From: Dimorphilus gyrociliatus | Taxonomy: Eukaryota; Animalia; Annelida | Length of the DNA: 64,000 nucleotides | Assembly (NCBI GenBank): GCA_904063045.1 | Contig: CAJFCJ010000001.1 | Span: 2,108,001 to 2,172,000, forward strand | Direction of reading: 5' to 3' | In this document: positions 48,756 to 54,430 of the stretch, one piece after another | Numbering within the stretch: the first letter of the stretch is position 1 | Layout of the letters: each line of letters begins with the position of its first letter | Program-made: the position numbers and the translations under genes | Notes under the pieces: generated by a model | The model's database searches: none | What the model saw: the letters and a program-made list of their open reading frames with translations, nothing else | What the model was told of the DNA's origin: nothing

Positions 48756-51592
48756 TTAAGCGACAGCAGAACTTTGAGCTTTCAGTTCTACTGGTTCACT
48801 TTCCTCCTCCTCTTCGGCTATATCTACTATAATATGCGTTTCTCTCTGCGCTTTCTTCCTAGCTACAAAGTTCTGCCATGTTCTCTGAATAATTCTAGCG
48901 CAGACCATTTCTCTTTGTCTCTTCAACATTGATGATGTAGGCTTATAGTTTGGTCTATCATTTACGGCTTTAACTTCACCCATCTCCCCTTCGTCTATGG
49001 TTCCGAGGAAGTTTTTAGTGAGTGCGTCTAGAATATCGACACAATGAACTAGTTCGTCTTCACATATTGGAATATTAAGTTGGACGAGTTTAAAATGATT
49101 TGGTAGTGGTATACGAAGGGGTTCTTCTAGTGTATCAACAAATTCGTGCAATTTTGTATAAGGTATATATTGAGTCGCCTCCTCGTCAAACTTTTCCCAA
49201 ATTTCGTAATACATATCAAAGTCATCTTGTGTAAGTCCTTGCTGAACATCCTCCGTAGCTTGGCTAAAGTTTTCGAGGATCACAGCAATAAACATATTCA
49301 TAACGATGAGGAAGCTGACTACTAAGTAACTGACAATAAAAAAAGTAGCCAAAGCCGCATTACCGCAATTACCATTCGGTAATTCTTTTGTTGGGACGGG
49401 ATTGCAATCTACCTCATTCATTAAGCCTGCTAAAACACCATCCCATCCAGCACTAGTTGATACCTTTAGAAGTAAAAGTTTTTCATTAATACAACTTATC
49501 TATTTACAGTATTTTATAAAGATGCTTTTTACCTGGAATAGCACAATGATCGATTGAAAGAATGTTTCAAAGTTGAACATGTCGTCTATTCCATGTGTAT
49601 GTTTAACATGCATAAAGAATGACATTCCGAATATGGCATAGATGAACATGACTAGAAAGAGTAGCAATCCGATATTGAACAAGGCGGGCATTGACACGGC
49701 CAGACTGAACAACAACGTTCGGATCCCTTTTGCAGATTTGACTAGCCTTAGCACCCTACCCACACGGAAAACTCGGACTACTCTTAAAAGTGTTGGCGAG
49801 ACAAAGTAACTAGATATTATATCCTTCATTGTCAGACCGAGAATCGAGAAGACAACGACGACAAAATCGAATACATTCCAAGGTTGTTTAAAATAGTACC
49901 AACGTAATCCTATGATTTTCATGACGGCTTCCAATGTAAAAACGACAATGAATAGTAGATTAATTTGGCTAAGGGCTGTTTCAACAGCTTTACTCTGTCC
50001 ATAATGTTCTAAACCCATTGCAACCATGTTTAACATAATGACAATCATAATACCAATATCAAACTTTTGGTTTGTCGTTAATTTGAAGAAAAATAAGGCT
50101 AATTTGAGCTATTTAAGAAGAAAACAACAATATTAATTGTATGACAGTTTTGCCAAATGTTTAGATTTTCTCCTCTCACCTTTGGTTTTGGAATAGGCTT
50201 TTGAGGGGCCTTCGAACCCAGTTTTTTCATGGCGTTGTAATATTTCTTCTGATCTTCCGTCATAAACATCTCTAAGCTACCTCCCGCCTTAATTTTTTTT
50301 ATCAGATAGTGAATAGGTTGGAAAATAGGTTGAAAATGAAAACTTACTTTCTTCTTTTGCATGTTGAAATTGTCTATTATAACACCAATGAATAAATTAA
50401 GAGTAAAGAAGGCACCAAAAATGATGAATAAGACGAAATAGAAGTGCATATAGACTCTCTCTTCGAACTTGGGTTGTAGACCTTTCTGTTAAAACCATTT
50501 GGGAAAAAAATGGAACAAAGAAAAGAGAACATTAATAAAACCTCATTATGAAAGTAGTATATTTAAATAAGAAACTGGGCCGATAACTGATGCATAACCA
50601 TGAGAGAGGATAGAGAGAACGTAGTCAAAAGTAAAACAAGGGAAAATCATAAAAAAATATAAGAACAAATGAAATAATAATATATAGGTATAAGACAATC
50701 CAAACAGATATGTAACAGAAAGCTAAGACCAATAAAAAAAAGATGAAAAGGGAAAAGAAAAACGGGTCAGCACCTCTCGGCTATCCGTTGCGTCTGCCAT
50801 AATATCCATCCAACCTTTAAAAGTCGCCTGCAAAAGAAAAAAGGAAGAGTGATTGGAAAACGATGAGGAAAAAGACGGGCTGTTATAGTGATTTTTTTTA
50901 TTCATAATACAGCGTGATAAAGCGGAAAAATATAAAAGCAGATTACAAAGTACTTTGAAAGAGTAAAATCGAAAGTTCGTTTTAGCAAGATTGAAGACCC
51001 AATTATGTCTTTTCTACCCTTAAAAACTCCTTTATTTAACCTATGGATTTTATGCATAAATATATAACGCAAAGCCAGGATTCCATCCCAAGCTCTCTTT
51101 TATAAATATAGCTCAGTTGTCCAAAGAAACACGGTAAAGAAATGATGAAAAACTGGGAGAAAGATTTAGATAAGTGTAAAAAAAAAGCAACCTCGATGAA
51201 TGACGAATGTATTACAATTATATATCTAATGTATTATTTTACATATAAAATAGATTTAGTTAATTTTAAGGAAGTTTAATACTGAATTTATTTACATATT
51301 GCATAACATCTTACTTTTAGAACTTTCGACATTTTCTTTTAAAATGTAAAATAAGTTGTTGATTTTTTGAAATAAAGGATTAACTTTTGTGTTCGTTTTA
51401 TATAGTAAACAGTATAAAAACATTAAAAAAGGGAAATTCTTTGATAGCTTGAGTGATGAACGCATAAAGCGGAAAAAGTTGCTTTAATATATAACTAAGA
51501 AAGATATAGTTAAGTGATATTTGACAAATTAAAAATAATAAATACTTGAAATGAAGATAGATAGATTGACAGAGACAGAGACAGAGAGAAAG

Positions 51593-51625
<33 letters not shown>

Positions 51626-51628
51626 CTA

Positions 51629-51659
<31 letters not shown>

Positions 51660-54430
51660 TATATATTTATACATTATAAAAAGATAAAATGTTTCCGCTC
51701 TTTCACCTTAGCACCACTATCTACGGCGTCGTGCATAATTTGTAGCCATCCTTTAAATGTAGCCTGGTATGACAAGCCGATTGTTTGACATGTTTGTTCA
51801 TTTTGCTTTTATTGATTTTATTTAATTTTTAAAAAAGAGGATAAAGTAAAGGTGTAAATAGGAAAGGATAGGATGATTGGACTTGCTGAGGACTGTTGTT
51901 GTAATTTTAAGAAATTAATAAAAGGTATTTAAAAATAATATCTGAGAAAAAGCAGGACTGAGTGATGAAGTGGAAGAGGAGGATGAAGGCAAGAGGAAGA
52001 AAGATACAGATTCTTTTTTAAATGGGAAAATGATATTATTAAGATGAGTGATTTTTAGTAGGGATGAGTGATTGAGATTATATTTATTAATATACAGTAT
52101 ATATCTAAATAATAACTTACCAGTTGGAGAAGTGCCAGAAGGCTCATTAGGACGTTATCAAAATGAATTCGAGAATTTTTCCATGTGTAGTTATAACCTG
52201 CTTTTGATAAATTCATGCAAGTAGCATAATCGGGAACATGGCTGGTGTTCAAACGTTCGTCCTTTTCATTTACGCATTTGTAAAATCTACCACTAAATAA
52301 TTGAACGCCCATAATTGCAAATATCAACCAAAAGACAAAGCAGACCAATAATACGTTAAAAATGGATGGTATAGCTTGAATTAAAGCATTCACGACCACC
52401 TTCATAGATTCCCATCTGGAGACGGCTCGTAGAGGTCTGAGAGCCCTCAGCGTTCTTAACGCTCTAAACGCTGATATATTACCTAATCCTGATTCCTCAG
52501 CGGCTAAACTAACTAAGGATATGGCGACGATTATAAAATCCAACCAGCACCAAGCGTCTGTAAAATATTTCTTAAAACCATAGGCGGCCCATTTAACAAG
52601 CATTTCAAAAGCAAAGATTACGGTGAAGACCTTATCCATATATTTTAAAGCCAATCTTAAAGTTTGTCTTTGTGGTAGATGTACGTCCTCAATAGCCAAA
52701 GTTAAAGAAGAGATGACGATCATGACGATGATGAAAGTTTCAAAGTATTTGTGTTCTACCAATTGATAAGTATAACACCGAAAAGACCACCATTTTTTCC
52801 CCAGTGGCGTTTCGTTAAGACTTGTACAGCATGCAGATTTACAGAGGAAGCTTTGGAAAGAAATATAGATTTGTTATTAATCGTTTTTGCTATATTTGGT
52901 TTCGCTGATTTACCTTTGCATACAACACTTTGGGCAGCACTCATCCGGATATCTGACGAAAATAACGTTAACTTCGTTAATTTCCGGTTGTTCGTTAGGA
53001 TCAATGGGCCCCTTTTGCAATTGGGAATCCTGAGAACCTAGTGAATATGTCGAAGTAGCGCCTCCTATTGACTGCGAGAAGGACGGATAGGTTCGTGTCT
53101 CATAGGAGTCGACCGATTTGGAAGCAGATGTTGATGAGACCACAGAAGCTTTGCTTTCCTTCTCCTTTAAGGAATTCCTTTCTTCATCCTCCTCTCTTTC
53201 ATCTAACGAATCAATTAGATGATAATTAACCTCCTTTAAGTACTAAATTATAAATATTATTTATCCGGATAATATTTAATTTATAAGGGATAAGATATCT
53301 AGAAAACTATCGTAACACTCTATCTAATTGATTGAATATTCATTATCGTAAAAGTCAAAGGGTTGATTCGATAATTCAATACTTAATACCAAATCAAATT
53401 TGGATGCTAAACAAATCAACTTATAACGACTTTTCATGCAATAAATAAATAAATAAATAAACCAACAAAACTGCAAAAACAAGAAAAGAAAACGAAAAAA
53501 TCAGGTCTATATAATTCTTCATTTCAACTGCAAATTTGTACAAAATTCAACAAAATCAAATGTTTTTTTCTATAACAATTAAAAATAAAATTTAATAAGA
53601 CAAAGAGAAGAGAAAATAAATATTTATTAAAGAAAAAAGGATAAGACTATTCCTCACTAGATGGCATTGATTTGAAATCTTTATTACACTTGCACTATGC
53701 TATATATGAGATGGCTAGTGCATAAAGAAAAGAGATTGAAAATGGTCGAAAAAAGGGCAAAAAAAATCAATGTGCTGCTCCACAACTGGTAACATGATTT
53801 CTTTGACGAAAGTCATATTCAAAGATGTTGAAAATTTACACTGGAATCATCTATGAAAAATCCCATGCTCAAATAAAAGATATAAAATCTGATATAGAGA
53901 GGATAACATTAAATACCATTAATTATAAAAGCAATCGACTATCAAGCTGATACTAGGTACAAATAGAAACACTATATTTACTATACTAGACATTTCTCTG
54001 TACAAGTATGACCTGAATGGTGTTTCTTGTATAAATTAACATACCGTGAGCTAAAATTGGTACATATCCAACTTTCGACCCTTTTACGAGTCTTACTTGC
54101 TGACCATCTTGAAGAAAAAAACACAAAAGGAAAAATGGTTTAAATTCTCTAGTTATAGCTAATTTCATGTTCGTTAATACTACAAAAAGAACGATATTAG
54201 AAAATAACGTGACGGAGATGAAATCTTCAGCCGACTATCTAAATACGGATATGTTTTCTTAATTCTCATAATGTTGTTGTGTCTTATATACAGATATTCA
54301 ATGAAATCATAATAAATTTTAAATAAGAGGAAAAGAATAGGGGGAAGGAGAACAAAGAATGGAAGGCAGCCAGAATGGAAATAAGATAAAAAGAAATATA
54401 TAAATGAGTAGGAGAGGTGGGGAGGGGGAC

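What the first reader, a model, noticed from the sequence alone, without database searches (positions are those of the whole stretch)
50917..51706. Docking/selector-like competing RNA pairings between the two pore exons
Seen: the identical 14-mer ATAAAGCGGAAAAA (plus strand) occurs twice in the A-B intron, at 51464-51477 and 50917-50930. On the mRNA strand each reads UUUUUCCGCUUUAU. Directly after exon A's donor the pre-mRNA reads GUGAAAGAGCGGAAAC, so intron positions +6 to +15 (AGAGCGGAAA) can form a 10-bp helix (one G-U) with either copy. The distal copy lies ~90 nt upstream of exon B's acceptor. Established: one docking site competing for several selector sites drives mutually exclusive splicing in arthropod Dscam1 and 14-3-3xi. 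Inference: distal pairing would loop out ~760 nt and pull A's donor next to B's branch point, sterically blocking A-B joining, while proximal pairing gives an alternative fold. This could be an RNA switch that picks the channel pore.
Basis: partly seen in the sequence, partly recalled or inferred. Interest (0 to 1): 0.8.

Follow-up and report, generated by a model that had tools for sequence, protein, structure and literature searches.

The report
Candidate splice-site-masking helix between sodium-channel pore exons
In a marine worm's sodium-channel gene, the start of the intron after one of two alternative pore exons can base-pair with a strongly conserved stretch just upstream of the other exon.

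Summary
The 14-mer occurs exactly twice in the 879-nt intron between two tandem domain-III pore exons of a para-like sodium channel gene on the minus strand. Both copies form the stated 10-bp helix with intron positions +6 to +15 after exon A.

New here:
- The copy upstream of exon B pairs further, covering exon A's whole 5' splice site (-2 to +15, -20.4 kcal/mol).
- A sister species at about 30% synonymous divergence keeps both exons under purifying selection. Its introns are unalignable except for islands that hold the dock and this distal element, including a 39-nt identical block. The helix persists there (-17.6).
- Shuffles reach the observed energy in 12/2000 (distal island) and 31/1000 (whole intron).

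- The proximal copy has decayed in the sister species (-10.2) and never pairs with the dock in ensemble folds.
- Both copies sit in one intron, which is not a Dscam/14-3-3 layout.
- There is no covariation; the single dock change weakens pairing.
- The purine-rich dock has other partners.
- The conserved motifs also fit protein sites (YGCY cluster).

An earlier scan note on the same stretch (s1-080345) reported the exon pair itself.

Verdict: a plausible long-range donor-masking helix, a member of a known kind, unproven.

The parts
51707..51763 (-). Exon A: 57 nt, phase 0-0, [19 protein letters not shown]. This is the domain III pore loop with the selectivity-filter lysine. It has a weak acceptor tract and a weak donor (AAG|GUGAAA).
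   Evidence: sequence and reading frame; 6 differences from the sister species, 5 of them synonymous and 1 amino-acid change; 5 of 9 matches to the donor consensus.
51692..51708 (-). Dock: AG|GUGAAAGAGCGGAAA, exon -2 to intron +15. It is the purine-rich arm of the proposed helix and overlaps the U1 binding site.
   Evidence: The pairs are +1..+4 with 50914-50917, +6..+15 with 50919-50928, and -1/-2 with 50912/50911.
51684..51706 (-). Conserved block directly after exon A (GUGAAAGAGCGGAAACAUUUUAU), with 22 of 23 positions identical in the sister species. The only change is G>U at +7. The block is not coding: in the sister species that change makes an in-frame UAG.
51609..51682 (-). (TA)n microsatellite inside the intron.
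51555..51600 (-). CU-rich tract about 110-150 nt after exon A's donor. It is a nearby alternative partner of the dock, or a PTB-type protein site.
   Evidence: -15.0; pairing probability 0.88 with the dock once exon B is in the construct. A comparable tract takes the dock in L083 (0.57-0.72).
51464..51477 (-). Proximal 14-mer copy (UUUUUCCGCUUUAU).
   Evidence: -18.2 with a 5-nt interior loop in the window, but only -10.2 for its degenerate homologue in L083.
50902..50988 (-). Conserved intronic island upstream of exon B, 92% identical to the sister species. It includes a 39-nt block with no change (50952-50914).
   Evidence: Neutral yardstick: 24-37% difference at four-fold sites.
50911..50930 (-). 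It pairs with -2..+15 of exon A's donor.
   Evidence: -20.4 in the window, -17.6 in L083; probability 0.97 when the RNA ends at B's acceptor.
50934..50942 (-). UCUGCUUUU: a second, weaker register for the dock (9 bp with G-U pairs). It is also the arm that pairs with GGCAGA in exon B.
   Evidence: -9.1, 8 of 9 pairs kept..
50774..50827 (-). Exon B: 54 nt, phase 0-0, [18 protein letters not shown]. It has a strong polypyrimidine tract and a very weak donor (GAG|GUGCUG). Its 5' half (50817-50795) can pair locally with the distal element.
   Evidence: 4 differences, 3 of them synonymous.: -22.0 / -23.3, with shuffles reaching this in 95/1000 and 19/1000.
50740..50755 (-). UUUCCCUUUUCAUCUU downstream of exon B: another pyrimidine partner of the dock in the window species only.
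   Evidence: probability about 0.7 when 114 nt past exon B are included.: -15.3 in the window, -9.3 in L083.

Best explanation
The gene is a para-like voltage-gated sodium channel on the minus strand. Its domain III pore-loop microexon is duplicated in tandem (A and B). Both copies are kept as coding sequence in a sister species.

Two non-coding islands next to these exons are under strong constraint:
- the first ~23 nt after exon A's weak donor;
- an ~87-nt block 75-160 nt upstream of exon B.

The 3' part of the second island (UUUCCGCUUUAUCACGCU) is complementary to exon A's 5' splice site from -2 to +15.

Most likely mechanism (inferred, not shown): this long-range helix, which loops out about 770 nt, hides exon A's donor from U1/U6. 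Exon A is then skipped and the upstream exon joins exon B, which has the strong acceptor. When the element is held elsewhere, exon A's donor is free. The element could be held by a protein, or by its alternative local pairing with the 5' half of exon B, which would enclose B's branch site, pyrimidine tract and acceptor in a loop.

The second, proximal 14-mer is probably not a conserved competitor.

Shown: the sequences, the complementarity, its rarity in shuffles, and the conservation of both arms.
Inferred: that the helix forms in vivo and that it affects exon choice.
For: - The helix covers -2..+15 at -20.4 kcal/mol in the window and -17.6 in the sister species. In both it is the best partner of the donor region within the intron.
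- Shuffles reach this energy in 31/1000 against the intron, and in 12/2000 or 11/2000 against the conserved island.
- Across 63 kb of background, only 5 overlapping 40-nt windows reach -20.
- The sister-species introns are unalignable except for islands holding both arms. Four-fold sites differ by 24-37%. By my arithmetic, a 39-nt identical block has a chance of about 1e-6, and at most 1 change in 23 nt about 0.003.
- It is the strongest uninterrupted helix between any of the islands, and 9 of 10 pairs are kept.
- Both exons show mostly synonymous change and both have weak donors, as regulated exons usually do.
- With the RNA ending at B's acceptor, the ensemble gives this helix probability 0.97.
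- Long-range or competing intronic pairing is an established way to control exon pairs (ATE1, PMC7797038; review of models in PMC6071210).
Against: - There is no compensatory change. The arms are almost identical in the only relative available. The one dock change (G>U at +7) turns a G-U pair into a U-U mismatch.
- The dock is purine-rich in a pyrimidine-rich intron and has several other partners. In ensemble folds the helix falls to 0.10 once exon B is included and to about 0 with downstream sequence. In the sister species it is 0.20 and then about 0.
- Conservation of the islands could be for protein binding. YGCY motifs cluster in the island and are what survives at the proximal site.
- The p-values are post hoc.
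- No transcript evidence shows that A and B are alternative, let alone exclusive.
Confidence: 0.37

Rival explanations
1. The conserved islands are binding sites for splicing-regulator proteins, and the complementarity to exon A's donor is incidental. The repeated 14-mer would be a recurring U-rich YGCY (Muscleblind-type) site. The CU tract after exon A would be a PTB-type site.
For: - Four of the six YGCY motifs of the intron lie in the island upstream of exon B, and a fifth is the proximal copy.
- In the sister species the proximal site keeps CGCU while losing complementarity, and two island motifs are kept.
- MBNL1 controls the mutually exclusive exons 6A/6B of SCN5A (PMC4831019).
- Conserved flanking introns are general for such exon pairs (PMC6071210).
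- The single substitution in the dock does not preserve pairing.
Against: - The dock itself has no YGCY and is still conserved for 23 nt.
- Complementarity between the two islands is rarer than in shuffles (12/2000).
- The motif assignment is by eye. No protein-binding data exist for this animal.
- The two readings are not exclusive: a protein could regulate the helix.
Confidence: 0.33
2. One reading: one docking site after exon A is competed for by two identical selector copies. The distal pairing blocks A-B joining sterically and the proximal pairing gives the alternative fold, as in Dscam1/14-3-3.
For: - The two copies are exact and rare.
- They use the same dock nucleotides, so they exclude each other.
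- In the window species their energies are close (-18.2 and -20.4).
Against: - The proximal copy has decayed in the sister species (-10.2; not among the six best partners).
- It is never above 0.03 in ensembles, and its energy is ordinary (142/1000 shuffles).
- Both copies lie in one intron and no selector is attached to exon A. The best partner in the upstream intron scores -14.5, which is background level.
- The docker is not in a flanking intron, unlike the established systems.
Confidence: 0.08
3. There is no role in exon choice. The islands are conserved for ordinary splicing signals or for something unrelated, such as a transcriptional element. The 14-mer repeat and the complementarity are chance in U-rich, low-complexity introns.
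For:
- The whole-intron shuffle p-value is only about 0.03.
- Many alternative pairings exist.
- There is no Rfam family.
Against: - The island upstream of exon B extends far beyond the branch site and pyrimidine tract. It is more conserved than synonymous sites.
- Neighbouring constitutive introns show no such islands.
- Both arms of the best helix fall in islands.
Confidence: 0.15

Closest known systems
Dscam1 exon 6 / 14-3-3 xi docking-site and selector system (arthropods)
   Same: A single sequence could pair with more than one complementary intronic copy. It concerns tandem duplicated exons with weak splice sites.
   Different: In the established systems the docker lies in the intron upstream or downstream of the whole cluster, and every variable exon has its own adjacent selector (PMC6071210). 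Here the dock overlaps exon A's own donor in the internal intron. Both copies are in that same intron, and only one is conserved. Pairing there activates an exon by approximation or de-repression; here it would hide a splice site.
Human ATE1 exons 7a/7b competing structures (R1/R4 versus R3)
   Same: There are two exons and conserved intronic elements. One element in the intron between the exons can pair with splice-site-overlapping partners, so that only one exon is exposed (PMC7797038). The toggle idea (distal element pairing with A's donor or with exon B) has this logic.
   Different: In ATE1 the two partners are similar duplicated regions at the two 3' splice sites. Here the partners are A's 5' splice site and, weakly supported, the body of exon B, and they are not duplicates of each other. 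There is no mutational evidence here.
FGFR2 IIIb/IIIc intronic stem (IAS2 / ISAR); recalled from memory, primary papers not retrieved
   Same: Both arms lie in the intron that separates two mutually exclusive exons, one near the upstream exon and one near the downstream exon, looping out several hundred nucleotides.
   Different: As I recall, the FGFR2 stem acts by bringing control elements together and does not contain a splice site. Here the upstream arm is the donor itself.
Splice-site-masking helices (tau exon 10 stem, SMN2 TSL2, chicken beta-tropomyosin exon 6B); from memory
   Same: A weak splice site is sequestered in a helix so that the exon is skipped.
   Different: Those are local stem-loops. 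Here the partner is about 770 nt away and sits next to the competing exon.

Membership tests
Docking-site/selector system (Dscam1 exon 6, 14-3-3 xi type) | A single docker in the intron flanking the exon cluster (left or right) | tested here: not met
   The dock is at 51708-51692 in the intron between A and B, overlapping A's donor. Definition taken from PMC6071210.
Docking-site/selector system (Dscam1 exon 6, 14-3-3 xi type) | One selector adjacent to each variable exon | tested here: not met
   Both copies lie in the A-B intron. The best partner of the dock in the intron upstream of A scores -14.5, and downstream of B -14.2, both at background level. The site downstream of B is not kept in L083 (-9.3).
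Docking-site/selector system (Dscam1 exon 6, 14-3-3 xi type) | Selectors exclude one another by using the same docker nucleotides | tested here: met
   The identical 14-mers pair with the same positions +6..+15.
Docking-site/selector system (Dscam1 exon 6, 14-3-3 xi type) | Docker and all selectors conserved, ideally with compensatory changes, in related species | tested here: inconclusive
   The dock (22/23) and the distal copy (identical) are conserved. The proximal copy has decayed. There is no compensatory change, and only one relative was available.
Docking-site/selector system (Dscam1 exon 6, 14-3-3 xi type) | The exons are mutually exclusive in mRNA, and disruptive/compensatory mutations change the choice | not testable with these tools
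No transcript-derived protein of this species was found.
ATE1-type competing structures | An internal conserved element complementary to two regions, each overlapping or adjoining a splice site of one exon | tested here: inconclusive
   Partner 1 (A's 5' splice site) is clear (-20.4 / -17.6). Partner 2 (the 5' half of exon B) scores -22.0 / -23.3, but shuffles reach this in 95/1000 and 19/1000.
ATE1-type competing structures | The two competing partners are similar, duplicated sequences | tested here: not met
   The flanks of A and B share no similarity beyond the exons (family D2 covers exon +3 nt only).
Intra-intron stem between mutually exclusive exons (FGFR2 IAS2/ISAR type, from memory) | Both arms in the intron between the two exons, one near each exon, and conserved | tested here: met
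   The arms are at +1..+15 after A and at -83..-101 before B. Both lie in conserved islands.
Splice-site-masking helix | The helix includes the positions bound by U1 (-3..+6) | tested here: met
   Predicted pairs cover -2, -1, +1..+4 and +6..+15. This is in silico only.

The most novel reading that the evidence does not exclude
A single conserved intronic element upstream of exon B acts as a two-state toggle. In one state it pairs with exon A's 5' splice site, so A is hidden and B is used. In the other it pairs locally with exon B, so that B's branch site, tract and acceptor are looped in and A is used. This would enforce one-or-the-other use of two in-frame selectivity-filter exons of a sodium channel, in an annelid. 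I know of no RNA-structure-driven exon choice described for that phylum, though I ran no search for annelid or lophotrochozoan cases.
Probability: 0.15. Interest if true: 0.65.

Novelty: new member of a known kind. Interest (0 to 1): 0.4.

Why it matters
If the helix is real, it would explain how a compact annelid gene keeps two in-frame copies of the exon that builds the domain III selectivity filter from being spliced together. Frame, intron length and spliceosome type cannot explain this here. It would also extend RNA-structure control of exon pairs beyond arthropods and vertebrates. The arms are short, conserved and easy to mutate or block with antisense oligonucleotides, so the choice between the two pore variants could be steered experimentally to learn what each pore does. 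If it is not real, the conserved islands still mark where the regulators of this exon pair bind.

Tried and rejected
**RNA evidence**
- The look-up of sequencing runs found two RNA runs holding 0.07 and 0.16 of the sampled words (X5, X1) and three unconfirmed 'RNA?' runs.
I left them out of alignments, folds and the Rfam scan. Only local k-mer and motif counting scripts read the whole window file.

**Transcript-derived proteins**
- All three word searches found only genomic fragments of one sister species (93-94% identity) and then distant Navs.

**More relatives**
- The metagenome scan gave 80 loci, mostly with a single pore microexon. By their Ga… contig names I took many for gutless-oligochaete host contigs, which I did not check. 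None was close enough to align introns.
- Helobdella (L082) also has a single exon.

**Mechanisms and origins considered and rejected**
- Origin of the two 14-mers by duplication of flanks: no collinear similarity.
- U12/U2 incompatibility: the donors are GUGAAA and GUGCUG, not U12-type.
- Frame-based exclusion: 57 and 54 nt, both in frame.
- Steric hindrance by a short intron: the intron is 879 nt.
- The conserved block after exon A as a coding extension: there is a stop after 13 codons, and after 2 in the sister species.
- Intron-hosted RNA gene: no Rfam match.
- A pairing of the dock with a tract downstream of exon B dominates the largest fold, but it is not conserved.
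Full report
**What is there**

The region lies in a para-like voltage-gated sodium channel gene on the minus strand, running from about 62400 to 48759. The fragments match Pfam Ion_trans, and the best named relatives are annelid and arthropod sodium channels.
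- The large domain III exon ends at 52121 (CUG|GUAAGU).
- The exon for domain III S6 starts at 50485.
- Between them lie two homologous microexons, both phase 0-0:
  - A, 51763-51707, 57 nt, [19 protein letters not shown];
  - B, 50827-50774, 54 nt, [18 protein letters not shown].
- These encode the domain III pore loop with the selectivity-filter lysine.
- Because both lengths are multiples of three, using both exons would stay in frame.
- The A-B intron is 879 nt and the donors are not U12-type. Frame, steric hindrance and spliceosome incompatibility therefore cannot enforce a one-or-the-other choice.
- Exon A has a poor acceptor tract.
- Both exons have weak donors: AAG|GUGAAA matches 5 of 9 consensus positions and GAG|GUGCUG matches 4 of 9, against 8 of 9 for the upstream exon.

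**The observation**

The 14-mer is present exactly twice, at the stated coordinates, and nowhere else in the window.
- The flanks of the two copies are unrelated.
- Only one other same-strand exact 14-mer pair of similar complexity lies within 879 nt anywhere in the 64 kb. The repeat is therefore unusual.
- Intron positions +6..+15 form the stated 10-bp helix with either copy.

The distal copy continues as ...UUUAUCACGCU.
- UCAC pairs with +1..+4 (GUGA), and CU pairs with the last two exon bases.
- The duplex therefore covers -2..+15, which is the whole 5' splice site of exon A, at -20.4 kcal/mol.
- The proximal copy reaches -18.2, but only through a 5-nt interior loop.
- Dinucleotide shuffles of the rest of the intron reach -20.4 in 31 of 1000 trials and -18.2 in 142 of 1000.
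- Against the 87-nt conserved island alone, shuffles reach -20.4 in 12 of 2000 trials (11 of 2000 when the donor is shuffled).

**Comparison with a relative**

- A Logan genomic contig has 93% amino-acid identity (P0001, locus L001; the longer L083 is the same species). It carries both exons.
- Exon A differs at 6 positions, 5 of them synonymous. Exon B differs at 4, 3 of them synonymous. Four-fold sites in the neighbouring exons differ by 24-37%. Both exons are therefore maintained as coding sequence.
- The introns cannot be aligned except for islands:
  - about 37 nt before exon A;
  - the first 23 nt after it (22 identical, G>U at +7);
  - 50988-50902 upstream of exon B, with a 39-nt block (50952-50914) free of change that ends in the distal element;
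  - the tract, exon B and its donor;
  - part of the sequence after exon B.
- At about 30% neutral difference, by my arithmetic, a 39-nt identical block has a chance near 1e-6.
- Among all uninterrupted helices of 7 bp or more between these islands, dock-distal is the strongest, with 9 of 10 pairs kept.
- In the relative the duplex is -17.6 and is again the best partner in the intron.
- The proximal copy is degenerate there (UUUUCGCUUAAU) and pairs at only -10.2.

**Cautions**

- The arms are nearly identical in the two species, so nothing can covary. The single dock change weakens the helix.
- The dock is purine-rich and the intron pyrimidine-rich.

| Construct | Window | Relative (L083) |
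|---|---|---|
| RNA ends at B's acceptor | dock-distal 0.97 | dock-distal 0.20 |
| Exon B included | dock-distal 0.10; the dock goes to a CU tract at 51566-51584, and the distal element pairs with exon B | about 0 |
| 114 nt past exon B included | about 0; the dock pairs with 50740-50755 | about 0 |

- In the relative a nearby CU tract takes the dock.
- The pairing downstream of exon B is not conserved (-15.3 against -9.3).
- The proximal copy never exceeds 0.03.

**An alternative pairing**

- The distal element (UCUGCU...UUCCGCUU) also pairs locally with the 5' half of exon B, at -22.0 in the window and -23.3 in the relative.
- This pairing appears in the minimum-energy fold of the island-to-exon-B segment in both species. 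It encloses B's branch region, tract and acceptor.
- It is only weakly distinguished from shuffles: 95 of 1000 and 19 of 1000 reach the observed energy.
- It suggests a toggle in which one element hides either A's donor or B's acceptor region. I rate this as possible but unproven.

**Rival reading**

- YGCY motifs cluster in the island (50987, 50940, 50924, 50914), and a fifth is the proximal copy.
- In the relative the proximal site keeps CGCU while losing complementarity.
- MBNL1 is known to set the mutually exclusive SCN5A exons 6A/6B (PMC4831019).
- A protein-site explanation is therefore about as likely as the helix, and the two could work together.

**Comparison with known systems**

- In Dscam1 exon 6 and 14-3-3-type clusters the docker lies in a flanking intron and each exon has its own selector (PMC6071210). 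Both features fail here.
- ATE1 uses an element in the internal intron that competes between two splice-site-overlapping partners (PMC7797038). This is closer in logic, but those partners are duplicates at the acceptors.
- From memory, the FGFR2 IIIb/IIIc intronic stem has the same topology (both arms in the inter-exon intron), and tau/SMN2/beta-tropomyosin helices share the masking principle. I could not retrieve the FGFR2 primary papers.
- I therefore file this as a candidate long-range splice-site-masking helix, which is a known kind, and not as a docking/selector system.

**Breadth**

- Other annelid loci have a single pore microexon. These come from metagenomes (mostly gutless-oligochaete host contigs, judged only from their contig names) and from Helobdella.
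- One unrelated marine-metagenome contig, L011, has its own tandem pair.

**Limits**

- No transcript of this species could be found through the protein searches.
- No Rfam family matches the intron.
- The organism is named Dimorphilus gyrociliatus only by an earlier unchecked note of this scan. That name is consistent with the annelid best hits and with the marine and coral run labels.

Noticed in passing
L011:6315-6589: A contig from an ENA marine metagenome, from an unrelated animal (about 60% identity in domain III), has its own tandem pair of 57-nt domain III pore exons (ATYKGWIDIIRDSVDSPPE and ATYKGWIDIIRDAVDSPNQ). They are separated by a 161-nt intron and have good donors. Duplication of this microexon has therefore happened more than once.
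   Followed up: partly
window 50288-50347 (minus strand): The 60-nt intron between the domain III S6 exon and the III-IV linker exon is in frame and free of stop codons ([20 protein letters not shown]). If retained, it would insert 20 residues just before the MFM inactivation motif.
   Followed up: no
window 51764-51800 (minus strand): About 37 nt directly upstream of exon A are almost identical in the sister species, although the pyrimidine tract is poor (…CAUGUCAAACAAUCGGCUUGUCAUACCAG). This is another candidate regulatory element of the exon pair. No convincing conserved partner was found for it.
   Followed up: partly
window 50714-50773 (minus strand): The sequence after exon B's very weak donor (GUGCUGACC…UUAUUGGUCUUAGCUUUCUGUUACAUAU) is also conserved for about 60-110 nt in the sister species.
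   Followed up: no
L002-L081: Many JGI metagenome contigs carry animal Nav genes. From their Ga… contig names I took many of them for gutless-marine-worm symbiont projects, which I did not check. In these genes the domain III pore loop is the same separate 54-57-nt microexon, so the microexon structure appears widespread across these animals and the duplication is lineage-specific.
   Followed up: partly
window 51609-51682: A (TA)n microsatellite in the A-B intron tripped the reads tool's filter. The tool said this is no evidence of anything. In the sister species the same position holds unrelated AT-rich sequence with its own small hairpins.
   Followed up: no
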